Source: Paramoeba atlantica (lineage: Eukaryota > Protista > Discosea). From it: 64,000 nucleotides of DNA. Location of the stretch: NCBI GenBank assembly GCA_977017575.1, contig CDRNVI010000003.1, positions 496,001 through 560,000 on the forward strand, given 5' to 3'. The notes below the pieces were generated by a model. That model saw only the letters and a list, made by a program, of their open reading frames with translations, made no database searches and had not been told where the DNA came from. The translations under genes were made by a program, and so were the position numbers. Position 1 is the stretch's first letter. Each line of letters starts with the position of its first letter. Shown here one piece after another: positions 1-21,560 of the stretch.

Positions 1-3000
1 ACGCATACTGTAATGCAAAACACCATATAGGGGATGTTTCCGAACAAACGTAAGTGATCATGAAGTCCGATAAGGAGTGATGCAAAAGCTTCATGTAGTA
101 AATCAGAATATGACTTGCTGTGTATTTTACTGAAAGGAGATGTCGCTTTCTCCTGTGAGTGGCGATTTATTTGTTTCTGATGAATATGTGAAACCTGATT
201 TGCTTTTTCGTCGACAATATCTGAAGTTGTTCGTTTGTGAGCAGTTTCGCTCTGCTCAAAGCTTTCCATTGCTTCGCAGACCATAGGAGTCTTGAATTCT
301 TCAGTGTCGTTTAGAGATTCCGCATACCGCTTCTGTTCTAAAGAGCTTAAATCGCGACGAATTGACTCTAGATCCTGCTGCTTGCGGAGATGCGAATCTT
401 TCGATATTTGAAAACTCTTTTCTAGAATTTGAAAGTGCGCTTGATCCTCCGAATTTGAAAATTCATCTAGCTTTAGAATACTCTGCGCACGCTCATATTG
501 TTGACGATGAAGCTCATGTTGTGCGAAGGCTAGTCGCTCTTCATCATAGGCCCTGTCCAACGCTTCTTGTTTGTGAACAACGTCATGTTCGAAAGCATAG
601 AATGAGTTATCCTCTGAAGTACCATTTGATGTATTCAACACTTCATTCAAAGTTGGGTCTACTCCTCCTTGAGCAGCAGGGACTGCCAAACTTTTCTGCG
701 CCGCAGTGTTGGAAGTGGAACGGGACCGAGAGTACTCCGTATTGTTAAGGTCTCGAATGTAAAATACTGAGCGTGATGGAGGGCCTGTAATGCCTAATAG
801 TCGATCAAATCCATCACGCGTGAGGCCGAACTGTTGCGAAAAGTGGATAAGCCTCTTTTCCAATCTTTTTAGATTTCGACAAGTTCGGGCTCCATGATCA
901 GTTTCGCCGCAACACAAACAAAAATGAAAACCCGCCGGGACGTGCCTTTCCGAAAGAGTACACATGTTGTCAGCCTTGTTGAAATAGAGGCAAGGGTAGC
1001 CTTGAGGATGCTTACGACGTTGCCAATTGAATGTGTGTGGCTTTAAAAACCTTACCCAATGCGCTGCAGTTAATATGGCCCATAGACGAGGCACGTCTCG
1101 AAACGACGTCTTGTACCAATGACGTGTCATTACCGTCTCAGCGCAACTTTGAGCATCATCACTAGAGGTCACAAACCAAAGACTGCGAAGATCATCTTCC
1201 GAAGTCACAAACACGTCGTAAAATCGAGTTCTAGAAATCGAAATCACTTTTTGGACTTCATCTAACATAAAATTTCTGCGAAAAGATGATTCATCACTTT
1301 CTTCGCCCGCACCTGAATCATCACTAATAGTATTCTTTGATGTCGATGGTGTTATGTCGGCATTCCTTTTTGTCACTGCTATCGTAACAGAGATAGAAAA
1401 ACGATCATTTATTTTTTCCGTCCCAAAGATTTCCGCTACAGCGGCTACCGATGTTCCCAGATCGTGCGCGAATTGTTGTATTGCACTCCGCAAGCCTTTC
1501 ATTGTGGAACAGTTTGCCGCATCGTGGTGAGAATGCCCACAGCAAAGACAAAAATGTTTATTCTGAATATGTTGAACATTCTTGTTAACACAGTTTCCCG
1601 TGTTGTAAGCGAAGCAAGGAGTTTCTGATATGGAGTAGTCCAATTTCACCCAAAACGGCGTAACAACAGACTCTGTCCATACAGCAGCCAGGAGGGTCCA
1701 AAAGAACGGCATAGATGACGGACATTCTCTTAACAATGCGAAAGCCTTCTTTCTCAATCTCGAATTGTTCCCCATTTTCCAAATATCGCGCAATTTTAAG
1801 TTTGATGCAACAAAATTTTGGTAGATGTCTTGTTTAGAGGCAGTTAGTCGAGTTTTCGAAAGTGAAGGATGTTTATCCATATCTTTCATAAGAAAAACAT
1901 CTCGAAATCTGTTTAACGGTGTAAGGCGAGAAGCCGGAGAGCATGATCTCGTGCGCGCTGAAGGCTGTGCCCGATGATTTTCTACGCTCTCAGATGATGA
2001 CACATTATTAATCACCTGGCTTTTAGTATTTCCGTGCGCGTGAAGTGGCATGGCAGTTTCGTTTAATAGCACCACGATTGTTGGAGGAGGTTCACTTTCT
2101 TGCAACCCGAAGAATTGCATGAGAGTCTCTTCAGATACTTTCAAAAGGACCCCTAAGTCACGCAGAAGACGTTCCAATTTGTTTAGACTTGGACAAATAT
2201 GAGCACCGTGATCACCACGGCCACAGCACAAACAAAAATGAAAGCCCTGTGTTTCGTGATCTTCGTTGCGGTTGCACTTATACTTCTCCAGATTGAAGAA
2301 TAAACACGGACTCTGGTGAATCTTTTTGACGAGCTGCCACGTAAATAATTCTTGAATGTTCGACCTTCCTTTAGTACGGTGCATAGTGGTGAGCAGAGCC
2401 CAGTGAAATGGTGCTTGTAGTCCTGTCAGAGACCAGTGATGAGTCACACGTGTCATGGCTCGTGATCGGATGGATTCGTTAGATCCCATGCTCCATAGCT
2501 CCACAAGCGTTGCGTCTCCATGTTCAATGAAAGTGTGATAGAAATCATCATGTTGCATCGTGACCCGGGGATACACGGCTTCTAAGGTATCATCCTTACG
2601 AATTTCATGTGGCAATACTTTTTCTTCGAGATGTACCGCCTTATGGGCCATATCATTGTACATTTCGCCTTGATGTTCCAGGAAATTTTCATCCAATATA
2701 TACATTTCTTTCTGGGCATTGGTAGACATTTCGATCGCAGTTGGTACGATTTCCTGCTTCGCTGGAGACGATATAAAAGCAAATGGTTTGTTTTCATGAC
2801 GAGTGTGTGGCTCAGTGACGTCATCAGGAAGAAGTTCCAGCCAAGAACCAGCAATGTGACTCGCAAGCGAGATCGTGTCCGGGGATGGCGGCACCAAGTG
2901 TACTTTTAAAAACGGAGAATTACTCAAGGGTCGTTTTTCATGAAACTCAGAGTGATTGGCATCACTCTCAAGAAATTCAGAGTATCCCGTACCTTGTTTC

Positions 3001-3944
3001 CGGAATTCTGAAGATGTGTACATTGCGAGATCCCGAAACTCGTCCACATTGGTTGCATTCATTTCATCGTGAATTCTATCTCCTTGTGAGGGTATGTACC
3101 GATTTCGATTTCTTCTACGTTGGGCGTTTGCAGTTTCGTACGGCATCGGTGTGCCTTCCAGACGTGCATTGCTTTCGGCTTCCTGATTTTCTAGTGCATA
3201 GTACTCACCATAGGGCGCACTAGCGGAATTTTCAAATCCGGGTGTCATACCGCGACGAGCTCGAAACACTCTTCCTGCGTCATATTCTGACGTAGATGGG
3301 GGGTACGGAACACGACGACCTCGCATCATCGAGCCATGAAGAGAGCCACGATGGACAGGTGAAATCGAAACGTCAGGTGAAATCGGAGGAGGGAGAGGGT
3401 AAGGAACATCCATCGGGTGGCCCATTCCCCCGCGGTCCATTCGTCCGCGCGTGTTCCTGCCACGGCGAGAAAAGTGGGGGACCGGGTCGCGTCCTAGAGC
3501 GCCTGGCATGGGGTACCCGTGCTCGGTAAATCCTGGCGGGGGATAAAACGACGGGGGGACAGGACCGTAGGGTCCACTGTCAGGGTGCTGTGGGGAGGGT
3601 AGAAAAGGGGGAAGAAAGTCGGAGTCGTGCTCCATTTCCGGAGCAAAGGGCATGCCACCACCGCGTTGAGTCCTGCGGGAAATCCTACCCTCTCGAGGGC
3701 GCGAGTGTGTCAGTCGTTGTGGCCCACTTCGAGAGGTATGTCTGTCACCCCGACGTCTCGGCTCAGGTCGATCGGAATCGTGTTGCCTGTCACTGGGAAT
3801 CTCGGTGTGTGGTTCTTTTGCAAGGTCTTTCGATGTAACACGTTTAAGAACCCGTATGGGTGGAGTGCGTTCCTCAGGCCGCTTCGCAGAGCCCGTCATG
3901 TCGGCGCAAGTTAATTCTTTGTGACTGGGGCTTTCTGAGGTCAT
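1..3944 (-). CDS. Large protein (at least 1314 aa, 3' end outside the window): Pro/Arg/Gly-rich N-terminus, three tandem Cys/His zinc modules each ending in a CCHC knuckle, then a coiled-coil-like stretch
   Basis: I translated the minus frame by hand: no stop from ATG 3944 (upstream TGA at 3954-3956) to position 3. It is absent from the ORF track, probably because it has no stop in the window. Modules: PCLFFNLEKYKCNRNEDHETQGFHFCLCCGRGDHGAHIC (2306-2193), PCFAYNTGNCVNKNVQHIQNKHFCLCCGHSHHDAANC (1616-1509), PCLYFNKADNMCTLSERHVPAGFHFCLCCGETDHGARTC (992-879). Confidence 0.9.
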   Translation of the reverse strand, partial: MTSESPSHKELTCADMTGSAKRPEERTPPIRVLKRVTSKDLAKEPHTEIPSDRQHDSDRPEPRRRGDRHTSRSGPQRLTHSRPREGRISRRTQRGGGMPFAPEMEHDSDFLPPFLPSPQHPDSGPYGPVPPSFYPPPGFTEHGYPMPGALGRDPVPHFSRRGRNTRGRMDRGGMGHPMDVPYPLPPPISPDVSISPVHRGSLHGSMMRGRRVPYPPSTSEYDAGRVFRARRGMTPGFENSASAPYGEYYALENQEAESNARLEGTPMPYETANAQRRRNRNRYIPSQGDRIHDEMNATNVDEFRDLAMYTSSEFRKQGTGYSEFLESDANHSEFHEKRPLSNSPFLKVHLVPPSPDTISLASHIAGSWLELLPDDVTEPHTRHENKPFAFISSPAKQEIVPTAIEMSTNAQKEMYILDENFLEHQGEMYNDMAHKAVHLEEKVLPHEIRKDDTLEAVYPRVTMQHDDFYHTFIEHGDATLVELWSMGSNESIRSRAMTRVTHHWSLTGLQAPFHWALLTTMHRTKGRSNIQELFTWQLVKKIHQSPCLFFNLEKYKCNRNEDHETQGFHFCLCCGRGDHGAHICPSLNKLERLLRDLGVLLKVSEETLMQFFGLQESEPPPTIVVLLNETAMPLHAHGNTKSQVINNVSSSESVENHRAQPSARTRSCSPASRLTPLNRFRDVFLMKDMDKHPSLSKTRLTASKQDIYQNFVASNLKLRDIWKMGNNSRLRKKAFALLRECPSSMPFFWTLLAAVWTESVVTPFWVKLDYSISETPCFAYNTGNCVNKNVQHIQNKHFCLCCGHSHHDAANCSTMKGLRSAIQQFAHDLGTSVAAVAEIFGTEKINDRFSISVTIAVTKRNADITPSTSKNTISDDSGAGEESDESSFRRNFMLDEVQKVISISRTRFYDVFVTSEDDLRSLWFVTSSDDAQSCAETVMTRHWYKTSFRDVPRLWAILTAAHWVRFLKPHTFNWQRRKHPQGYPCLYFNKADNMCTLSERHVPAGFHFCLCCGETDHGARTCRNLKRLEKRLIHFSQQFGLTRDGFDRLLGITGPPSRSVFYIRDLNNTEYSRSRSTSNTAAQKSLAVPAAQGGVDPTLNEVLNTSNGTSEDNSFYAFEHDVVHKQEALDRAYDEERLAFAQHELHRQQYERAQSILKLDEFSNSEDQAHFQILEKSFQISKDSHLRKQQDLESIRRDLSSLEQKRYAESLNDTEEFKTPMVCEAMESFEQSETAHKRTTSDIVDEKANQVSHIHQKQINRHSQEKATSPFSKIHSKSYSDLLHEAFASLLIGLHDHLRLFGNIPYMVFCITVC

Positions 3945-5191
3945 GACATAAAATCACCGATACGCGTAAAGATTCTGATAAGAAACTAGAACACAAAAGG
4001 CAAATTATTGATAGGAGAATATGTTTTGATAACTTTTGCATGTCTATGTGCATGCGTGTAATACAACGTGCGTGCATGTATATCAATAGTGCATCTTACA
4101 AAAAGGTAGGACATTTCGTGAAGCGCAACAGGAAGAATAGAGAACACATAAATTTCATAAATAGAGAACAACTGAAAACTCGCTGATAAGACACTTTTTC
4201 CTATACACCCCCATATAACGATCATATCGATCGTGCAAATCCGTTTAATCAAGATAATGTGAAAACACAAACATGCGCTAACGTTACGAAGCTAGAAAAT
4301 ACACAGCAAGAAAGAATAGCAAACCTAAATAGTTCATATAGGAAAACTAGAGAGGAATGTGGCGCGAGATTAAAGCCCTACGAAAGAAAAATCAGACTCA
4401 AAAGATATAAGGTTGAGAGCGAGTGATACGAAATGCAAAAAATAACACAACTAATCACAAAAGTGACGGTGTTGCATAAAAAGTGCGAGACGTGCAATAT
4501 AGCTTATATTGGCTTTCGCAATATAACATCGGAAAAGGTCTGTATAACATCGAAAAAAAATGGAAGTATCGAGGCTCGTTGAGAACCAAATCAAACAATC
4601 GAGTAACGAAATAACTCACTCCAGAAAAAGAAAGTGCATAGAATAGACGTTTAAAAAATATGGTTCATAGAAAACTATAGCAAACTGGGAGAACATTTAA
4701 CTTTTTTTTATACGAAATCGAAATTTATAAAAAATTAGCAGAATTATTATAAAAAATTGTAAGAAAACCGCCTCGACTCGAAAACCATCTTTGAGATAAA
4801 CAAATTTGGAGAGCCGAGTTTAAGGACCGCACAATCAAGAAATTGCTACTTAAAATAACATAAAGTTCATATCACCTTATGAAAACGCTAAATCATTTAC
4901 TTAACCCCATACTCTTAAAATTCCGTCACACACAACAGACGACATGCGTACCTTATCTAGCTGACCCTTTCAATCTTCTCCACGTCACGTTGTTCTATCC
5001 TGCTTTATCTCTCCTTCCAAACTTCCTCCAAACTCCTTTCTTTCTCAAACACAAGATTTACATCGTAGACCCAAAAAGACCCTGAGGCAAAGTCCCATCC
5101 TAAACCCCAATTTAAAACGACCCTACTACCACAGTACTGTACTCGTCAATACAATACCCCCTTGGTCCCCCCCACCCCCTCCCCCCCCGGC

Positions 5192-5872
5192 TCACCCCCG
5201 GGACTGCACCATCAGCGTCGCCCCGTCCTCCGTCATGTGCCCGTTCATCTCCGACACCGCCGCGTCGGCCTCCGCCTTGGAGGCGTAGTGCACGAAGGCG
5301 TACCGCCCCCGGGCGGGGTTGCGCCCCTCCCGCGGGCCGTCCACCCGGGTGACCGCCCCGAACGGCGCGAACAGCCCGTGCACGGTGCTCTCCGACATCG
5401 CGTGCGGGAGGCCCGCGACGTAGACCGTCGTGGGGTCGGGGTCCGAGGCCCGGGGGCGCTTGTTGTAGCCGTAGTCCACGGCCCCGGGGTAGGGGGCGGG
5501 GCTGCCCCCGGGGTAGGGGGGCGGGGGAACGGCACGGGGGTAGGGGGAGGGGAGGGGAGCGCCCCGGGGGAGGGCGGGGGTGGCGGGGATACTTTGTGCC
5601 ATCATGCGGTCGTCCAGTTCGACGGGGCTTACGGTGACGGTGAGGGGGGTGTTGACGAAGCCCACGCAGTAGGGTTGGTTGGAGAGGAATTGGAGTACCC
5701 GGGAGGCGTTCTCGATGCGGTCGAATCGGGCGTAGCCGGTGCATCCGACGCCTGTGGGACTGGGTAGCAGGGCGGCGTTGACGAAACCGTTGGCGAAACG
5801 AAAGAAGGTGGAGAATTCACGGGGGGTGATGTCAACGGGTAAGCCGGTAACGACGAGGGTGGCAGAAGCCAT
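5192..5872 (-). CDS. Two-RRM RNA-binding protein (N-terminal RRM RBPMS/couch-potato-like) with Pro/Tyr-rich linker
   Basis: RNP2-like LVVTGLP and VYVAGLP; RNP1-like TGYARF and RYAFVHY; the PREF..FF motif resembles RBPMS-type RRMs. Confidence 0.85.
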   Translation of the reverse strand: MASATLVVTGLPVDITPREFSTFFRFANGFVNAALLPSPTGVGCTGYARFDRIENASRVLQFLSNQPYCVGFVNTPLTVTVSPVELDDRMMAQSIPATPALPRGAPLPSPYPRAVPPPPYPGGSPAPYPGAVDYGYNKRPRASDPDPTTVYVAGLPHAMSESTVHGLFAPFGAVTRVDGPREGRNPARGRYAFVHYASKAEADAAVSEMNGHMTEDGATLMVQSRG

Positions 5873-6063: not shown

Positions 6064-7101
6064 CTAGGATTTGAGATGCTCACCCGGTTCACAGGTCTCC
6101 AACAAATGGTACATGCGCCGCAAAGTTTGATTGGCACCACGATTGTAGCGTTGAGCAAAGCCTTCTACAGCCTCGACAACGTCTACCTTTGGGCCCAGGC
6201 CCTGTTCATGCATCGTCTGGCGCAGCTGAACTCCTCGGAGGGCTTCATCCTCTTCATCACTCCACGGTTTACTGGAGTCCCACTTTGTGACATCGATCAC
6301 GGCATGACTGGTGGGATCCTTGCAGTGAGGGCAGCACTCACACCCGGTTTCATCTCGAATCGAAGGTAGTCGCATAGTTCCGTACCCGGTGCAACTGTGA
6401 GTAAATATCGGAACTCCTTCTACGTGACACAGGTGCGTATGATGACGGGGTGAGGTCCAAGACAGGGCATCGCGTTCGGTTTCCCAGTGGGCATCCTCCA
6501 GAGCGTAAGACAATATTCTCTCGTAGCCGGAGTGAGATTTTCCGAATAAGCCCCCAGCGAGCGCCTCTGGGGTAGTATCGTATTCCAGACACCATAGCAT
6601 AATACGTGGAACATCCACGCGAATACGTGAACATGTATTGTATTTCTGATCGTGACAGATAAGAAGAATTCGGGCGTCTTTTGATGCTGGATAGTTGTCC
6701 AAAACTTTCTGAAATTCTATAGCTTCTGCAACCTCTTCTAAAGGATTTTCCGATATTATGGTTCTCACGAATAATAGCGGCTGTATAGGACCTTCAAGCA
6801 GGGCTTTGTACCTTGAGAAGCGTTGCAAATAATCGTTTTGAATTTTTGGATTGCTTATGTCGAAATGAGTAAAACATGTGTGCTTACCACGAAAAAGTAA
6901 CCATATGCCAACTGGGTCTGCCACTGCAGGTTCTGGAAAAAAGTCCGAAAGATTGGAGCGGCGCGTATATTGAGTTATTGCGTCGAATGAGCAACGAACA
7001 AATTCATATGGGGAGAGTGAATCATCTGTCTTCCGCAGCGCAAGTTTCGATATGGCAAGCGAGGGTCCGCACCACCCGCCTATACAGACAAGACGTCGCA
7101 T
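6064..7101 (-). CDS. DUF1796-like (putative papain-like cysteine peptidase) protein with C-terminal Cys cluster and SANT/Myb-like helix
   Basis: N-terminal LVCIGGWCGPSL...LR...SPYEFVRCSF fits the DUF1796 pattern (SLGxxC...LR...PFDW); C-terminal CCPHC...H and WSDEEDEAL. Confidence 0.6.
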   Translation of the reverse strand: MRRLVCIGGWCGPSLAISKLALRKTDDSLSPYEFVRCSFDAITQYTRRSNLSDFFPEPAVADPVGIWLLFRGKHTCFTHFDISNPKIQNDYLQRFSRYKALLEGPIQPLLFVRTIISENPLEEVAEAIEFQKVLDNYPASKDARILLICHDQKYNTCSRIRVDVPRIMLWCLEYDTTPEALAGGLFGKSHSGYERILSYALEDAHWETERDALSWTSPRHHTHLCHVEGVPIFTHSCTGYGTMRLPSIRDETGCECCPHCKDPTSHAVIDVTKWDSSKPWSDEEDEALRGVQLRQTMHEQGLGPKVDVVEAVEGFAQRYNRGANQTLRRMYHLLETCEPGEHLKS

Positions 7102-13823: not shown

Positions 13824-14846
13824 TTATAAGCTAATGGTTTCATCGGGAGTATTCTTTTTGCGTGGTTTTTGCGGAGTTATTGAGTTATTATGCGAAAGTT
13901 TTTCTGTTTTAGTTGATTTTGAGAAAAATGACATAAGGTCTTTTGGTCGGTATTCGTCCAGAGCAGATTTCCGTGCCGGGTCTCGGGTATTAGATTCTAC
14001 GCGCTTACTGAAATTAGGGTTAATCGGATGCCATTGCACTTCATCAGACGGCGTGAGTACGTGTTTTACTTCATGGAATGGTAGAGTATTATCCAGCCAC
14101 AAATCTACGGTCTCTGGAGTATCCAATATGGCGGGCATTCGATTGTGACACCACTTCAACGAGTCGGATGCGTCCACAGTAAGTATTGTGCATCGCTCAC
14201 TGTCATAGAGACCTGCAAGAGGCATCAAACGAGATTGAATGGGATTATCATTCAGAACGTTTGCGCTGCGCAGTACATCATCCTGCGAGAGCTCTAGCTC
14301 TCTTTTTGGATATATATAGTACGGTTGAGGATGTGTTTTCGGAGAATTGGGAAAATGCTTCCACTCAATAAAGCCTGTTACTAACACTATGCACCGATTT
14401 TGTAAATGGTGTCGAAAAGAAGCACGTTCAGAAACGGAATCCGAACGAGCATTAAACAATAGCGAAGACATTTGTGGAACTCTAAATCCCCATGGAAGAG
14501 TCTGCAGAACGAATGCCTTTTTGCACGTGTTCGGCGAAACAAGAATAGTTAAGTAGCCACCAGGACTGATGTTACATGAATGTGGACGAAACGCTTCGCT
14601 ATTTATCCACGATATCTCACTCGCTGCAGAGTCAGAATTCTTTGTAGGTCGCACTGTACCCGTTTCATTACATTTTGCAAAACTATGATTCAGTGCGAAA
14701 TCAACGGTATGCGTACTTTGTTCTTGCGAGGTAGCTCTGTTGCTTTGAAGACGCACTGCTTCTCTTCGTCTTCTACGTGCTGTCACCCTTTGAGCGTATT
14801 GAATGAGTACAGGCGCTTCAACGTCGACGGCTGCTCTGCCGCACAT
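13824..14846 (-). CDS. HMCES: SRAP-domain (HMCES/YedK) abasic-site DNA-protein crosslinking protein
   Basis: Starts MCGR (catalytic Cys2), with LFNARSD, RCIV...GFIEWK and HNRMPAIL motifs. Confidence 0.93.
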   Translation of the reverse strand: MCGRAAVDVEAPVLIQYAQRVTARRRRREAVRLQSNRATSQEQSTHTVDFALNHSFAKCNETGTVRPTKNSDSAASEISWINSEAFRPHSCNISPGGYLTILVSPNTCKKAFVLQTLPWGFRVPQMSSLLFNARSDSVSERASFRHHLQNRCIVLVTGFIEWKHFPNSPKTHPQPYYIYPKRELELSQDDVLRSANVLNDNPIQSRLMPLAGLYDSERCTILTVDASDSLKWCHNRMPAILDTPETVDLWLDNTLPFHEVKHVLTPSDEVQWHPINPNFSKRVESNTRDPARKSALDEYRPKDLMSFFSKSTKTEKLSHNNSITPQKPRKKNTPDETISL

Positions 14847-16084: not shown

Positions 16085-18559
16085 CTACTGAGCCCAAAAT
16101 TCATCGTTGACCTCAATGAATCCATCAAGGTTCGATGGATGGGATGCCCCAATGCGCAAAGTACCGGCGAAAAAGCGTCGGTACACTTCGAGTCCGTCTT
16201 CTCCACTGTGGACAAGGTAGACAACATTGCTAAGCCACTCGGAACCTTTCACCACCCCCGCTTCAAGATTCGCTCTCCATCGAGGCGTAATTTTCTCCTT
16301 CCAGTGCTTCTTAGGCCCAAAGATTAGTATGGGGTTTGGAGGAGTCGTACCAATTTTTCGTCGGACCTCTTCCAGGGCGTATTCGAAATCAGTGCCAACT
16401 CCGCCAACGCAAATAATCGGGAAGTCTAAGTTAAAGTCAGACTGTCTCTCTACAAGTTTTTCCAATCGGTAGGTCATCCAGGCGTCAACAAAACTATTTT
16501 GCTTCTGCTCATTAATAACAACACCTGCTTTTCGTTTTCCGGCACCAAAGTCCACGAACAAGCCGCAAGACAAAATACCCAGATTATGTGCGACGCGATT
16601 TCCCAATTCCATGATGCCTGGACCACCACCAGTGACGACGCAAAGACCTTTTTGGGATACCTCGGGATTTGGAGAAGTTGTGACGATCTGTTTAAGACCA
16701 CTGAATACTGTTTTGAGGTCGGACTCGAAATCGCCTTCCACAAGATTTGAGCCGTACACTCCGACGTAGAAGGCTCGGAGATACTCCTCTTTCCGACCCA
16801 TTGGGACAAACATACCGCTGTCTGTGCCCATTCGATGTACGTACTGAAAGATTTGTCGACGGCGAACATCTACGTGGTAGACTCGAACTCCAAACAACAT
16901 CAGATCTTGCAACATGGCACGATCGCTTTGGCTAAAGAAAGAGCCCGTGGACTGACTGGCTTCGAGAAAATAGATCGCACGTACACATTGGCACACATAC
17001 CCCGAGAGTAAAAAGTGTTTCAGAATTGGTGAGATAAAGTACTTAGTGAGCAGTACGCCTTGGCTTGTAATCTCGCCCTGTGCAATTGCTTTCAGAAGTC
17101 CGTACTGACATTGCTGCACCAGATACTGTCGAGCCTGACTCAACTGCTGCTGTGGGTGAACCGAACCAACGTATGGCACAGGTTGAGGTCGGGACGTAAT
17201 CCACGAAGATTCCGTCAGCTCACTCATTTGACTCCCTTTGCAAATATACACGCACGCCTGAACATCGTGCTCCGTGGGTGCCGTCGCAAATGCCGCAGAG
17301 GCCTCCTCAAAGTTCATCAAGAGTTTGTTAAGCGCGGTGCGGTCCTCAAAAGCAATTCCCTCCCGATACGGCTCCACGGTGTAGAACTCAATCGGAATGC
17401 GGTCAAGCTCCTTGTCCGAGTCCCCGTAGAACACAAACGTGCGCCCGCACAGCGTCTCCTCCTCACTGGAGCCGTAGGGCTCGAGTACACTGGCGGAGGT
17501 GCAGTGAATCCCCGGAGGGAGCAACTCATCGACAACACGGGCGAACATCGTATGAATGTGCATCGCTTTCGAACGTACCATTAACATGTCTCCCTCCCGG
17601 GCGTAGCGAGAGTTACTCCCTTTGTGGTTCTGGTGCAAACGTAGCATGGGACGAATGTGGGTGGTGCTTTTTGATCGCAGTGCCTTGCCAACGGTAGGAA
17701 GAAACCCCGTGATTTCAAAATCATACGTAATGGCCCCTGGTTTCAGCTTGATAAACGCCACAAGACGACCGTCCCTCTCCTCAAGCTCCCAATCCTCCTC
17801 ATCCTGGGCGCCATACACCAACAAGGGATCTCCAAACCGCGTGGTGCGTCCCTTAAGCTGTCGGATATACTGTTCATGGTGAACCCGGCGTGCGGCACAC
17901 ACCGCAAACAGTTTCCCCAACTGTGTACCCATCTCCACAAAATCTAGCGCCAGCACCCCCATGGTTGCAATCGCCACCAGCCGTATCACACAAGATGCCG
18001 AGCGTGTCTCCTTATCCAGCACCAACTCATCCGTTACACTGTGCAGCCCAAGCTGAGACAGTGTGGACTTTAGATTAAAACTTAGTCGGTCGTTGGGCCC
18101 CAGGCACCATCCCAGGAATTGCGGGGAGATGTCGGTAATCGAAATCTCGCAGCGCAGTGTCTTGCGGTCCTCCCGGGTGAGCCCGACAACACGGCCATCG
18201 GGGGAGACGAGATCGAAGGAGGTGTCGACGAGGACACGACTGGCCTGGGAGTGCGGGATGTGGTGCGCCCCGCGTAGGGCAGGGGACATGGGGAGGACGG
18301 AGTAGGTGGGGGTGGGGGGGAGAACGGGCTGGTGGACGAGCGCGGGTTTGTCTTCCACGGGTTTGTCTTCTTCTGGGGTGGGGGAGGAGAAGGGGGTGGG
18401 ATCTTGGGCTTCGTCTTTTCCGGTGGGGGGGAGGGCGAGATCTGGGGGGGAGGCGTCCTCGGTTTGAAGTGGTGTGTCGTCGTTGCGAACCCAGCTGGGT
18501 ACCCAATTGCTTGCGGAGGTGTTGGGTCGGGCGGATAAAGGGGTTGTGTTACCGGACAT
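16085..18559 (-). CDS. Large LOG-family (misannotated 'lysine decarboxylase') nucleotide hydrolase with long N-terminal domains and Pro-rich leader
   Basis: C-terminal LOG motifs VVTGGGPGIMELGNR, ERQSDF and VGGVGTDFEYALE. The upstream FNLKSTLSQLG, FYTVEPYRE and ITSQGVLL blocks resemble the long Chlamydiae-type LOG proteins as I recall them. Confidence 0.8.
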   Translation of the reverse strand: MSGNTTPLSARPNTSASNWVPSWVRNDDTPLQTEDASPPDLALPPTGKDEAQDPTPFSSPTPEEDKPVEDKPALVHQPVLPPTPTYSVLPMSPALRGAHHIPHSQASRVLVDTSFDLVSPDGRVVGLTREDRKTLRCEISITDISPQFLGWCLGPNDRLSFNLKSTLSQLGLHSVTDELVLDKETRSASCVIRLVAIATMGVLALDFVEMGTQLGKLFAVCAARRVHHEQYIRQLKGRTTRFGDPLLVYGAQDEEDWELEERDGRLVAFIKLKPGAITYDFEITGFLPTVGKALRSKSTTHIRPMLRLHQNHKGSNSRYAREGDMLMVRSKAMHIHTMFARVVDELLPPGIHCTSASVLEPYGSSEEETLCGRTFVFYGDSDKELDRIPIEFYTVEPYREGIAFEDRTALNKLLMNFEEASAAFATAPTEHDVQACVYICKGSQMSELTESSWITSRPQPVPYVGSVHPQQQLSQARQYLVQQCQYGLLKAIAQGEITSQGVLLTKYFISPILKHFLLSGYVCQCVRAIYFLEASQSTGSFFSQSDRAMLQDLMLFGVRVYHVDVRRRQIFQYVHRMGTDSGMFVPMGRKEEYLRAFYVGVYGSNLVEGDFESDLKTVFSGLKQIVTTSPNPEVSQKGLCVVTGGGPGIMELGNRVAHNLGILSCGLFVDFGAGKRKAGVVINEQKQNSFVDAWMTYRLEKLVERQSDFNLDFPIICVGGVGTDFEYALEEVRRKIGTTPPNPILIFGPKKHWKEKITPRWRANLEAGVVKGSEWLSNVVYLVHSGEDGLEVYRRFFAGTLRIGASHPSNLDGFIEVNDEFWAQ

Positions 18560-19154: not shown

Positions 19155-21560
19155 TTAACCTCGGGCATCCTCTGATGCATTTCGTAGGTACACATTTCGA
19201 GCGTCGAACCCGACAACTACTTCCCGCACCTCCAGTATGCGCACCGCATTTGCAATCTCTTCCATACTAGTAGACCTCCCGCGCCCTAGCACACGGCGAA
19301 GTTCATCCATTGACACCGTACTTCTCTCGCTTACGGTGCGGAGATACTCCTCGATTCGACGTACAAGCAAATCGGCGCCGCCCTCGGAAACGTGACCACC
19401 AAATACGCGAGCAAAGTTTACCCCGGTGTCACCGGATCCCGCAGTGAGGTCCACTCCGGCACTTCCCCAAGCGGCGTGCATTAGATCACGCGCGTCCTCA
19501 GCGTCGCGTAATGTCACCTGCACACTCCATCGCATACGTGCCCTGGCCTCCGCCAGTCGTATGAGCGACTCCAGCGTACGGAGAGTTGGGCTCATGGAAC
19601 CAAACGAGCGCACTCCCCGCATGGTGCAGTAGGTATTGGTAAGGGAGTTCTGAGCCTCAGCCGAGAGCACAGGATGGATCTGTGAGCGGGCGTACACAAT
19701 AAATTTAGTGAGGTCTGTGGAAGACATAACTTCCTCACCCGTGTTGACGATTCCATCCGTGTCCATCGCATCCGCTGCTTTTTCGTTCTCCTCCGGACCT
19801 GTGGCTCCAAACATGCGAATGAGATGACGAGTTAAGGAGCGGTGAAACTCCTCAGGGTGGTCATCAAGCATTAGATAGATGAGATCAAATCGACTGAGTA
19901 GACCGGGGTCCAAATTTAGATTCTCAACAACGGTAAGATTTTTATCCCACTTACTCTCGCGAGGATTCGCCGCGGCCAATATTGAGGTTCGCGCATTCAA
20001 CTGGCACACAATACCTGCTTTCGCAATACTTAACGTGTGCTGCTCCATGACTTCCTTTAGCACATTTCGCTGTTGCGTGTCCATCTTATCAAACTCATCA
20101 ATACAGCACACCCCACCGTCGGACAAAACCAACGCACCGCTCTCCAGTACGCGATCCCCTGTGTCAGCGTCGCGCACAATGTACGCTGTGAGTCCGACAC
20201 TACTGCTACTTCGACCACTCACATAAACCCCACGATGGGACACACGGTGCACATGCGCCAGGAGCTGCGATTTCGCCAGCCCGGGATCACCACAAAGCAG
20301 AATATTAATTTCCCCACGACAGGAGCTGTTGGAGAATTGTTTTGCGGTTCCACCAAACAGAAGGGTCAGTAGCCCATCTTTCGCGCTCTCCATCCCAAAC
20401 ACGGAGGGGGCCAGGGACTGTCGCAGGAGGTCATAAATATCCGGCCGGTCCGCCATCTCCCGCAAACGCTGCACCTCACCCAAAAAATACGCACTCTCGG
20501 TATCCTTATTCTCCAGACAGCTCAGAAACCTCTCCGTGCCCTCATTCATACGATCGTGTGCATTCCTCTTCTTCAGCCTTTTCAAGTGAATACAATCCAT
20601 ATGGGAGCGTACCACGGCATGGCACAAATACCGGTTCTGCTGGATCCGTGCGGGGTGCACGCGATACACCCCGGTGGCCACCACCACATCCCCGGGCACC
20701 ACACTGTCCACGAGGGCGTTGTACACCGAGAGCGCGATCGTAATCGGGGTCTCCCCGGGACGCATATCCTCGGGGGTCTCCTGTAGCCGAATCACCTGTT
20801 TGTCCTCGTAGGTACACAGGTGGTGCATGAGACGGAAGGTGCCGTGGGCGCCACACCCGGGACAGCGCGGGGGCTCGTGGATTTTACCCCGATCCACGCT
20901 GGAGTGGGTGGTGAGCGCACACTTCTCACACTGGAACTCCGCGTGGGCCATCTCGGGGATCACCGTGGAGGTGCGCACGACAATACCCCGGACCGCGGTG
21001 AGACGCTCCACGTGGAGGTGGGAGAGCGCATTCATCGCGGTCTCGGGGACGTTGTAGGGGCAGAGGACAAGGGGGCGAACCGAGGGGGCGTGGGGGGAGG
21101 TCGAGGAGGGGAGCTCACGCACGCCGGCAGGGGGGGTTGTGTGGATTTGATACCAGTGCTCCCCGAGGGCGAGCTCGAATACCGGGATACAGGTCGTGGG
21201 GTGTTCCATCATGGATTCGTGAAGAAAGGGGTGGGTGTCCGCGAGTGTGGACATGTCCACCTCCAGGCCGCACCCGGGTTGTGTGAGCTCTCGCAGTCGG
21301 CTGTGAAGTGCGGTCTCGGCGTACTGCCGACAGCTACGCTCGAGTTCTTGGATATCGATGGAGGTTCCCCATATGACGGTGCGAGTCTCGGCGGCCGGTA
21401 GTCCGTGCGCCACGGTCATGTTATCTGGAAGGGCGCCCGGACCCTCGACATCGTACGACTCTGGTTCCGGTTCTGCATGGATGGGTGGTGGTGGAACACT
21501 GTCAAAAGGGTCCACGAAGGCTCTTGAGCGAGGCATGCCGTACGTCTCGTCGGGGTCCAT
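19155..21560 (-). CDS. MCM4: DNA replication licensing factor MCM4
   Basis: Walker A GDPGLAKSQ, IDEFDKM, SRFDL Arg finger, CEKC..CPGC zinc finger; N-terminal VIWGTSI and VLESGALVLSDGGVCCIDEFDKM are MCM4-like. Confidence 0.92.
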   Translation of the reverse strand: MDPDETYGMPRSRAFVDPFDSVPPPPIHAEPEPESYDVEGPGALPDNMTVAHGLPAAETRTVIWGTSIDIQELERSCRQYAETALHSRLRELTQPGCGLEVDMSTLADTHPFLHESMMEHPTTCIPVFELALGEHWYQIHTTPPAGVRELPSSTSPHAPSVRPLVLCPYNVPETAMNALSHLHVERLTAVRGIVVRTSTVIPEMAHAEFQCEKCALTTHSSVDRGKIHEPPRCPGCGAHGTFRLMHHLCTYEDKQVIRLQETPEDMRPGETPITIALSVYNALVDSVVPGDVVVATGVYRVHPARIQQNRYLCHAVVRSHMDCIHLKRLKKRNAHDRMNEGTERFLSCLENKDTESAYFLGEVQRLREMADRPDIYDLLRQSLAPSVFGMESAKDGLLTLLFGGTAKQFSNSSCRGEINILLCGDPGLAKSQLLAHVHRVSHRGVYVSGRSSSSVGLTAYIVRDADTGDRVLESGALVLSDGGVCCIDEFDKMDTQQRNVLKEVMEQHTLSIAKAGIVCQLNARTSILAAANPRESKWDKNLTVVENLNLDPGLLSRFDLIYLMLDDHPEEFHRSLTRHLIRMFGATGPEENEKAADAMDTDGIVNTGEEVMSSTDLTKFIVYARSQIHPVLSAEAQNSLTNTYCTMRGVRSFGSMSPTLRTLESLIRLAEARARMRWSVQVTLRDAEDARDLMHAAWGSAGVDLTAGSGDTGVNFARVFGGHVSEGGADLLVRRIEEYLRTVSERSTVSMDELRRVLGRGRSTSMEEIANAVRILEVREVVVGFDARNVYLRNASEDARG

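What the first reader, a model, noticed from the sequence alone, without database searches (positions are those of the whole stretch)
1..3944. Hidden 1314+ aa ORF with three tandem composite zinc modules (C-x7/9-C-x5/6-H-x4/5-H-x-C-x2-C-x4-H-x4-C)
Seen: a stop-free minus frame of 1314 codons that the ORF track missed. Three modules 630 and 684 nt apart are each preceded by a Trp-rich segment (W.LL...W) and end in HFCLCCG...H....C. Known: a CCCH-like finger fused directly to a CCHC knuckle (C..FN.G.C....C...H.C..CG..H....C) is typical of gag-like ORF1 of DIRS/Ngaro tyrosine-recombinase retroelements. Here the third ligand is His, not Cys, in all three copies. Inference: either a new multi-module RNA-binding regulator or a domesticated, triplicated gag. 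The C-terminal region beginning at the window edge (DLLHEAFASLL...) may carry an enzyme domain.
Basis: partly seen in the sequence, partly recalled or inferred. Interest (0 to 1): 0.75.

Follow-up and report, generated by a model that had tools for sequence, protein, structure and literature searches.

The report
Tail-anchored protein with three novel zinc modules
This is a real, complete 1325-residue gene of a kinetoplastid protist: a membrane-anchored protein carrying three copies of a rare, undescribed ~150-residue two-zinc domain. It is a cellular gene family, not a tamed retrotransposon gag, and what the domain does is still open.

Summary
Window 1-3944 (minus strand) is a stop-free frame starting at an ATG. 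It ends only 34 nt beyond the window edge, so the protein is complete at 1325 aa. Three ~150-aa repeats (pairwise E 1e-28 and 4e-12) each carry the reported Cys/His pattern.

The C-terminus is a single hydrophobic tail anchor.

The gag/DIRS reading is not supported:
- The module occurs in only two adjacent genes of this genome (six copies per haplotype).
- No RT or YR gene lies nearby.
- A confident AlphaFold model (pLDDT 89.5, pTM 0.86) matches no capsid, no viral protein and no solved fold (best Z 2.6).

A profile search of 1.84 billion representative proteins found 21 hits besides the window's two genes, of which I take 16 as genuine. Named sources are Perkinsela, its Paramoeba host transcriptome and Neobodo. 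These relatives are tail-anchored single-module proteins, or fusions to protein kinases or a UPF1-like helicase. The neighbouring paralogue joins the same three modules to a probably inactive TUTase-like domain and TPRs.

Best reading: a membrane-tethered binding platform, most likely for RNA or RNP. That last step is inferred only.

The scan had already noted the same module and gene pair on another piece of this genome, probably the second haplotype contig (note s1-389436), and reached a similar verdict.

The parts
1..3944 (-). Gene A: codons 1-1314 (plus 2 nt of codon 1315) of a complete 1325-aa ORF. The last 34 nt, stop included, lie left of the window (G000:C3:495967-496000).
   Evidence: both haplotype contigs (C3, C30) carry it with only 3 nt differences
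2955..3944 (-). Residues 1-330: Pro/Arg/Gly/Ser-rich, basic (pI 9.3), low-complexity N-terminal region with 11 RG/GR/RGG motifs.
   Evidence: composition; no Pfam hit
2880..2918 (-). Residues 343-355: short conserved motif SP[FL]LKV...PPSP, shared with the Perkinsela-type tail-anchored relatives.
   Evidence: invariant S343 P344 L346 K347 P353 S354 P355
2085..2546 (-). Module 1 (residues 467-620). Cys/His cluster C547 C557 H563 H569 C571 C574 H579 C584 lies at window 2193-2306.
1401..1829 (-). Module 2 (residues 706-848), the most divergent copy. Cys/His cluster C777 C785 H792 H797 C799 C802 H807 C812 lies at window 1509-1616.
771..1226 (-). Module 3 (residues 907-1058), the copy closest to the single module of Perkinsela-type proteins. 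Cys/His cluster C985 C995 H1001 H1007 C1009 C1012 H1017 C1022 lies at window 879-992. This is the copy that was modelled.
48..569 (-). Residues 1126-1299: charged Glu/Arg/Ser/Lys-rich stretch, ending in a juxtamembrane motif (HSKSYSDLLH) that resembles HTKA[ST]YEA.LH of the relatives.
   Evidence: not analysed further
1..35 (-). Start of the single C-terminal hydrophobic segment (residues 1304-1322, then HML and stop). The rest lies beyond the window edge.
   Evidence: (the only Kyte-Doolittle segment >= 1.8; peak 2.63)
3945..4000 (-). Upstream pyrimidine-rich runs followed by AG at 3987-3986 and 3976-3975. This is compatible with a trans-splice acceptor but is not evidence on its own.
   Evidence: read directly from the sequence

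Best explanation
Gene A is an ordinary, single-locus cellular gene inside a same-strand (polycistronic-type) gene run of a kinetoplastid. Its product is tail-anchored: one hydrophobic helix at the extreme C-terminus, no signal peptide, and everything else facing the cytosol. That cytosolic part has four elements. First, an RG-rich disordered N-terminus. Second, a short conserved SPFLKV..PPSP motif. Third, three copies of a ~150-aa domain. Fourth, a charged linker. In each domain, four N-terminal helices and two C-terminal helices flank a ~40-residue Cys/His cluster. Eight conserved ligands (C, C, H/C, H, then C, C, H, C) most likely hold two zinc ions. The first half looks like a CCCH finger with His in place of the third Cys. 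The second half has retroviral-knuckle spacing. The domain is an undescribed family restricted, as far as can be seen, to early-branching kinetoplastids. Inferred mechanism: the protein is a membrane-tethered multivalent binding platform, and the modules most likely bind RNA or RNP partners and hold them at an endomembrane surface. Shown: the ORF, the repeats, ligand conservation, the tail-anchor topology, the family's distribution and fusions, and the lack of a known fold. Inferred: zinc binding, two sites, RNA as ligand, and which membrane.
For: The ORF is complete. The repeats are significant. In a 21-sequence alignment, six of the seven invariant columns are Cys or His (C79 C89 C103 C106 H111 C116); the seventh is W49, and H101 and N83 are nearly invariant. 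The second Cys of 'CC' is not conserved, so it is probably not a ligand. The AF2 model reaches pLDDT 89.5 and pTM 0.86, with short helices right after the first Cys and before the second His, as in CCCH fingers. There is a single C-terminal hydrophobic segment in A, and likewise in relatives P0004-P0007 and P0013. The family holds 16 relatives that I take as genuine, out of 1.84e9 representatives, from Perkinsela, Paramoeba (its host) and Neobodo. A shares a short N-terminal motif and a juxtamembrane motif with the Perkinsela-type proteins. Hints towards RNA: paralogue B joins the same three modules to a domain related to a trypanosome 3' terminal uridylyltransferase (PDB 5hzd, E 1.7e-7); relative P0018/P0025 is fused to a UPF1-like RNA helicase; A has an RG/RGG-rich basic N-terminus, and 20 of the 21 aligned modules have pI above 7 (A's module 1 is 6.9); both motif halves resemble RNA-binding finger types.
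Against: No assay or structure shows zinc or RNA binding. Four relatives are fused to protein kinases, which fits a protein-binding or regulatory adaptor equally well. The knuckle half has Leu where nucleic-acid-stacking aromatics sit in canonical knuckles. In distant relatives it carries a 7-10-residue insertion, so it may be purely structural. Neither zf-CCHC nor zf-CCCH profiles hit the modules. I could not inspect model coordinates, so the ligand pairing is unverified. No trypanosomatid orthologue with known function or localisation was found.
Confidence: 0.45

Rival explanations
1. The module is a protein-protein interaction or regulatory adaptor domain, not a nucleic-acid binder. Zinc only stabilises the fold. 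Protein A is then a membrane scaffold that recruits partner proteins, for example kinases or the neighbouring TPR protein B.
For: Four of the fused relatives are protein kinases (P0010, P0013, P0017, P0019). The Cys/His cluster lies between helices in a compact, confidently modelled domain (pTM 0.86). The knuckle lacks the aromatic residue used for base stacking, and its spacing is not conserved across the family. The UPF1 CH domain, which occupies the analogous N-terminal place in UPF1 helicases, is a protein-binding Cys/His domain (my own knowledge).
Against: There are fusions to a TUTase-like domain and to a UPF1-like RNA helicase. Protein A has an RG-rich tail. All but one of the aligned modules have pI above 7.
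Confidence: 0.35
2. A membrane-anchored zinc-dependent enzyme-like domain, for example a divergent cross-braced ubiquitin-ligase-type finger.
For: Eight Cys/His ligands lie within about 40 residues. Tail-anchored or membrane E3 ligases exist (my own knowledge).
Against: No RING, PHD or other Pfam hit even at E <= 10. No structural match. There is no initial CxxC pair, and the ligand order does not fit RING or PHD.
Confidence: 0.05
3. A domesticated, triplicated gag (ORF1) of a DIRS/Ngaro/VIPER-type tyrosine-recombinase retroelement.
For: The C-x2-C-x4-H-x4-C spacing equals the Gag 'CH-box'. Some YR-element Gag-like proteins, including T. cruzi VIPER, carry it (PMC6681497, PMC4157794). A helical region precedes the knuckle, loosely like the CA-NC order.
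Against: The genome-wide profile search finds only the six modules of genes A and B on each haplotype. No RT, RH or YR gene lies nearby. There is no capsid, NC or viral structural match. There are no hits in IMG/VR. Relatives are cellular proteins with kinase, helicase or TM fusions. Knuckle spacing is not conserved in the wider family.
Confidence: 0.04
4. A chance ORF or non-functional relic.
For: There is no expression data. The N-terminal third is low complexity.
Against: The frame is 3978 nt long and stop-free on both haplotypes. Homologues are conserved in other genera, with invariant Cys/His.
Confidence: 0.01

Closest known systems
Perkinsela sp. CCAP 1560/4 protein KNH05566.1 (P0007; database name 'aminodeoxychorismate lyase', with no Pfam hit), plus P0004-P0006 including a Paramoeba aestuarina (Perkinsela host) transcript
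   Same: The same module (30% identity to module 3, E 1e-23). The same SP[FL]LKV..PPSP motif and juxtamembrane motif, and a single C-terminal TM. Module 3 of A and of B groups with them in the tree (support 96/96).
   Different: They are 496-555 aa with one module; A has three modules and a different, RG-rich N-terminus. None has been characterised.
Neighbouring paralogue B (2177 aa, G000:C3:488495-495028, minus strand)
   Same: Three modules in the same order. Module 1 of A pairs with module 1 of B, and module 3 groups with module 3, so the triplication predates the gene duplication.
   Different: B has a TUTase-like N-terminus with degenerate catalytic motif, TPRs and a long helical C-terminus, and no membrane anchor.
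Retroviral-type zinc knuckle, zf-CCHC (PF00098)
   Same: Exact C-x2-C-x4-H-x4-C spacing, with Gly after the second Cys, in all three modules of A.
   Different: No profile hit. Leu replaces the aromatic after the first Cys. The motif sits within a 150-aa helical domain. Relatives have a 7-10-residue insertion before the last Cys.
CCCH finger, zf-CCCH (PF00642, TIS11 type)
   Same: C-x7-9-C-x5-6 with [FY][FY]N after the first Cys. Short helices are predicted where CCCH fingers have them (the comparison rests on my own knowledge).
   Different: The third ligand is His (Cys in a few relatives). Spacing to the last His is 4-5, not 3. No profile hit.
Gag-like ORF1 of YR retroelements (DIRS/PAT/Ngaro/VIPER)
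   Same: Some carry a CX2CX4HX4C box (PMC6681497, PMC4157794).
   Different: Here there is no RT/YR, no repeats and no multiple copies. There is no structural or sequence match.
Cys/His modules attached to RNA enzymes: the UPF1 CH domain and the CCHC knuckles of TUT4/TUT7 (my own knowledge)
   Same: This is a functional analogy only. A Cys/His domain sits N-terminal to a UPF1-like helicase (P0018), and modules sit beside a TUTase-like domain (B).
   Different: No detectable sequence or fold relationship.

Membership tests
zf-CCHC zinc knuckle (PF00098) | C-x2-C-x4-H-x4-C ligand spacing | tested here: met
   All three modules of A: C571/C574/H579/C584, C799/C802/H807/C812 and C1009/C1012/H1017/C1022.
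zf-CCHC zinc knuckle (PF00098) | Match to the Pfam profile at or above its gathering score (20.8 bits) | tested here: not met
   No hit on A at E <= 1 or on the six modules at E <= 10. A and B are not among the 150 best genome hits, which reach down to 24.6 bits. Lower scores were not listed, and HMMER filters drop most weak hits.
zf-CCHC zinc knuckle (PF00098) | Spacing conserved across the family, with an aromatic residue after the first Cys | tested here: not met
   Leu follows the first Cys. Distant relatives carry 7-10 extra residues between His and the last Cys.
zf-CCCH (PF00642) | C-x(7-8)-C-x5-C-x3-H ligands and a profile match | tested here: not met
   The third ligand is His, with 4-5 residues to the last His. 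No profile hit. None of the 36 genome candidates lies in A or B.
Gag / ORF1 of a YR or LTR retroelement | Encoded next to RT/RNase H and YR or integrase within a repeat-bounded, multi-copy element | tested here: not met
   The neighbours are B, an RRM protein, DUF1796, SRAP and MCM. The module is found only in A and B, on each haplotype. Terminal repeats were not searched.
Gag / ORF1 of a YR or LTR retroelement | Capsid-like helical fold | tested here: not met
   Best PDB match by VIA has Z 2.6. Foldseek PDB E >= 4.9 and BFVD E >= 2.9, and no capsid is listed. A missing match is not proof of a different fold.
Tail-anchored membrane proteins | A single TM segment within about 30 residues of the C-terminus, and no N-terminal signal peptide or other TM | tested here: met
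   The only hydrophobic segment is 1300-1325 (core 1304-1322), followed by 3 residues. The N-terminus is polar. This rests on a hydropathy scan only; membrane insertion cannot be tested here.
Kinetoplastid two-zinc helical module (undescribed; Perkinsela KNH05566-like) | A ~150-aa unit with W..F.WA.L helix, PC.[FY][FY]N, C, H.C..C, H, C and two C-terminal helices ending in L.G | tested here: met
   All three modules of A align over the full length with 15 other relatives; invariant W49 C79 C89 C103 C106 H111 C116. Profile E-values run from 8e-46 to 1e-4.
Kinetoplastid two-zinc helical module (undescribed; Perkinsela KNH05566-like) | Binds two zinc ions | not testable with these tools
   Inferred from eight conserved ligands. 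Model coordinates could not be inspected.

The most novel reading that the evidence does not exclude
The module is a new zinc-stabilised fold that binds RNA. Early-branching kinetoplastids would use it to tether RNAs or RNPs to a membrane (protein A and the Perkinsela-type tail-anchored proteins) and to target RNA enzymes and kinases (pseudo-TUTase B, a UPF1-like helicase, bodonid kinases). On this reading it is a lineage-specific RNA-localisation and regulation toolkit in organisms that control genes almost entirely after transcription.
Probability: 0.3. Interest if true: 0.65.

Novelty: new variant of a known kind. Interest (0 to 1): 0.5.

Why it matters
Kinetoplastids regulate genes mostly after transcription, and their repertoire of RNA-binding and adaptor domains is only partly catalogued. 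This domain is confidently foldable, yet it has no Pfam model, no solved relative and no fold match. It survives in the much-reduced Perkinsela genome and has been recruited to membrane anchors, kinases, a UPF1-like helicase and a TUTase-like protein. Defining it would add a new zinc-domain family. It would also correct a wrong database name (KNH05566.1, 'aminodeoxychorismate lyase') and give a handle on membrane-associated RNA or signalling biology in basal kinetoplastids. Two limits apply: the family is tiny and lineage-restricted, and nothing here shows its function.

Tried and rejected
- Pfam on A, on B and on each module gave nothing for A or for the modules.
- PDB sequence searches with the protein and with the module profile gave nothing significant. 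TIM and HIV NC appear only at E 0.24-8.
- The word-index protein searches gave the following. A region 460-1070 found only A itself and B. The module profile among short proteins found none at E <= 10. B region 1-420 found only B itself.
- The first AF2 run, with only six sequences, was poor in the zinc region (pLDDT < 50 at residues 57-106). It was replaced by the 21-sequence run.
- Fold searches (PDB Foldseek, VIA wide, VIA second look, BFVD) found no match.
- ESM Atlas returned only unnamed eukaryote clusters at 0.93 and one cluster with 10% zf-CCCH at 0.91. It gave no usable lead, and no sequences were returned to test a DIRS link.
With A1 it found no relatives in IMG/VR or JGI metagenomes.
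- PF00098 and PF00642 genome scans placed no hit in A or B.
- The kinase fusions belong to no informative kinase family.
- Literature searches found no description of the protein or the domain.
- The haplotypes differ by only 3 nt, so no dN/dS test was possible.
- Rejected ideas: a C-terminal enzyme domain, a dispersed retroelement, and a RING/PHD-type finger.
Full report

Translating window 1-3944 on the minus strand gives 1314 codons with no stop, starting with Met at 3944-3942. The ORF lister skips it only because it runs off the window edge. The window is G000:C3:496001-560000.

After fetching the flank, the ORF is L006:467-4444 (minus strand). It is 1325 aa, with its stop 34 nt left of the window. 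The gene is therefore essentially complete inside the window.

The second haplotype contig (C30) carries the same ORF with 3 nt differences: P128L, T996A and one silent change.

The FCLCC cores start at residues 570, 798 and 1008. That is 684 and 630 nt apart, as reported. All three copies fit the reported Cys/His pattern and follow W..LL segments. The repeats are highly significant: module 1 against module 3 gives E 1e-28, and module 2 against module 3 gives E 4e-12.

**2. Anatomy of the protein**

- Residues 1-330 are a basic, low-complexity region rich in Pro, Arg, Gly and Ser, with 11 RG/GR/RGG motifs.
- Residues 343-355 hold a short motif, SPFLKV...PPSP.
- Modules occupy residues 467-620, 706-848 and 907-1058.
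- A charged stretch follows.
- The only hydrophobic segment of the protein is 1304-1322, followed by just three residues.

With no N-terminal signal peptide, this is the topology of a tail-anchored membrane protein.

**3. Surroundings**

All neighbouring genes lie on the minus strand, which is the kinetoplastid polycistronic pattern. They are B (2177 aa, just left of the window), A, an RRM protein, a DUF1796 peptidase-like protein, an LRR/FNIP-repeat ORF, an SRAP protein, an 824-aa ORF with no Pfam hit, and an MCM. No reverse transcriptase or tyrosine recombinase is present.

B carries the same three modules and several other parts:
- TPRs at about 1498-1600.
- No membrane segment.
- An N-terminal region related to a trypanosome 3' terminal uridylyltransferase (PDB 5hzd, E 1.7e-7). 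From memory, this entry is RET1.

In the weak alignment over the catalytic motif, the DxD of the TUTase is replaced by P-L-E. B is therefore probably inactive; this is an inference.

A profile of the six modules finds only these six places in the 45.7-Mb assembly, each twice because there are two haplotypes. This is a tandem gene pair, not a dispersed element.

**4. Relatives elsewhere**

The module profile was scored against 1.84 billion representative proteins. It returned 23 proteins at E <= 0.001. I set five aside as simple repeats or ordinary knuckle arrays (P0008, P0015, P0016, P0020, P0023). I took 16 relatives, besides A and B themselves, as genuine:

- **P0004-P0007** (496-555 aa) have one module and a C-terminal TM. 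They share A's SP[FL]LKV..PPSP motif and juxtamembrane motif. P0007 is Perkinsela sp. CCAP 1560/4 KNH05566.1, named 'aminodeoxychorismate lyase' although it has no Pfam hit. P0006 is a Paramoeba aestuarina transcript; Paramoeba is Perkinsela's host.
- **P0017** (Neobodo designis) and **P0010, P0013, P0019** join the module to a protein-kinase domain.
- **P0018/P0025** join it to a UPF1-like SF1 RNA helicase.
- **The rest** are short or partial proteins from unnamed assemblies.

No trypanosomatid protein appeared. A tree puts module 3 of A and of B together with P0003 and the Perkinsela-type proteins (support 96/96), and pairs module 1 of A with module 1 of B (84/79). The three-module array therefore predates the A/B duplication, and module 3 is the ancestral copy.

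**5. The module itself**

In a 21-sequence alignment the invariant columns are W49, C79, C89, C103, C106, H111 and C116. N83 and H101 are nearly invariant.

The remaining ligand lies between C89 and H101. It is His in most sequences and appears to be Cys in P0006. The second Cys of 'CC' is not conserved.

This gives eight ligands, in the order C, C, H/C, H, C, C, H, C, which is enough for two zinc ions. The first half resembles a CCCH finger with His as the third ligand. The second half has knuckle spacing in the A/B/Perkinsela clade, but carries a 7-10-residue insertion in the distant relatives.

With six sequences AlphaFold failed in this region. With 21 sequences it gave pLDDT 89.5 and pTM 0.86. 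The model has four N-terminal helices, a Cys/His region with two short helices, and two C-terminal helices.

Nothing known matches it:
- No Pfam family.
- No PDB sequence match.
- No solved or viral structure: Foldseek PDB E >= 4.9, VIA over 48,161 chains best Z 2.6, second look none, BFVD E >= 2.9.

The zf-CCHC and zf-CCCH profiles, run over the whole genome, place no hit in A or B. For zf-CCHC only the best 150 of 373 candidates were scored.

I could not inspect coordinates, so the ligand pairing is unverified.

**6. The retroelement idea**

The papers I read confirm that some YR-retroelement Gag-like proteins have zinc-finger motifs, and that T. cruzi VIPER has a CX2CX4HX4C box (PMC4157794, PMC6681497).

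Against a gag origin:
- A single tandem locus.
- Cellular neighbours.
- No capsid-like or viral fold.
- No IMG/VR or JGI metagenome relatives.
- Relatives with cellular architectures.

I put this reading at about 4%.

**7. How it most likely works**

What is shown is a tail-anchored protein displaying three copies of a conserved Cys/His domain to the cytosol. The rest is inference.

The domain behaves as a portable binding module, attached in different lineages to a membrane anchor, kinases, an RNA helicase and a TUTase-like protein. Four things tilt me towards RNA or RNP as the ligand (about 45%):
- The RNA-enzyme fusions.
- A's RG-rich tail.
- Near-neutral to basic module pI (6.9-9.3).
- The CCCH-like and knuckle-like halves.

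Three things keep a pure protein-adaptor role nearly as likely (about 35%): the kinase fusions, the missing aromatic residue, and the variable knuckle. Which membrane the protein sits in cannot be told from sequence.

**8. Novelty**

No paper in the library mentions the Perkinsela protein or such a domain. This is an undescribed, rare zinc-domain family with no detectable known fold. I class it as a new variant of a known kind (Cys/His zinc modules), with unknown function.

The scan had already noted the same module and gene pair on another piece of this genome, probably the second haplotype contig (note s1-389436), with a similar verdict. My searches reproduce that verdict independently. Notes s1-389609 and s1-389610 describe gene B and the shared module, and both claims held when I checked them.

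**9. Limits**

- No AFDB, HHpred or Repbase search was available.

Noticed in passing
G000:C3:488495-495028 (L005:2495-9028, minus strand), 973 nt left of the window: Paralogue B (2177 aa). It has a TUTase-like N-terminus (PDB 5hzd, E 1.7e-7) whose DxD motif appears replaced by P-L-E. It also has three of the same modules, three TPRs at about 1498-1600, and a roughly 570-aa C-terminal region with no Pfam family. No other long relative sharing words with its N-terminus was found.
   Followed up: partly
window 5192-5872 (-), 6064-7101 (-), 13824-14846 (-), 19155-21560 (-): Ordinary same-strand neighbours: an RRM protein, a DUF1796 papain-like protein, an SRAP protein and an MCM helicase. The 824-aa ORF at 16085-18559 has no Pfam hit.
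   Followed up: no
window ~5160-5195 (minus-strand reading): A long G-run (roughly GGGGGGGGAGGGGGTGGGGGGG) at the 3' end of the RRM ORF. It could form a G-quadruplex.
   Followed up: no
G000, many contigs (e.g. C4:432518, C19:595027, C22:92540, C27:225347, C27:254154, C110:21773): At least 150 zf-CCHC hits genome-wide. Many lie in open frames of identical length (322 aa) with identical scores, which looks like a multi-copy element with a knuckle-bearing ORF. It is unrelated to gene A.
   Followed up: no
Relatives P0010, P0013, P0017, P0019 (between module and kinase domain): The kinase-fused relatives share a second small Cys motif ([WF]-C-x-C-x2-C, followed by His) just before the kinase domain. 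It has no Pfam hit.
   Followed up: no
P0007 = KNH05566.1 (Perkinsela sp. CCAP 1560/4): The database name 'aminodeoxychorismate lyase' has no support: no Pfam family hits it. It is a tail-anchored single-module member of this family.
   Followed up: partly
window 957 and 3562 (gene A codons 996 and 128): The two haplotypes differ in gene A by only 3 nt. Two change residues: T996A, which lies next to zinc ligand C995, and P128L.
   Followed up: yes
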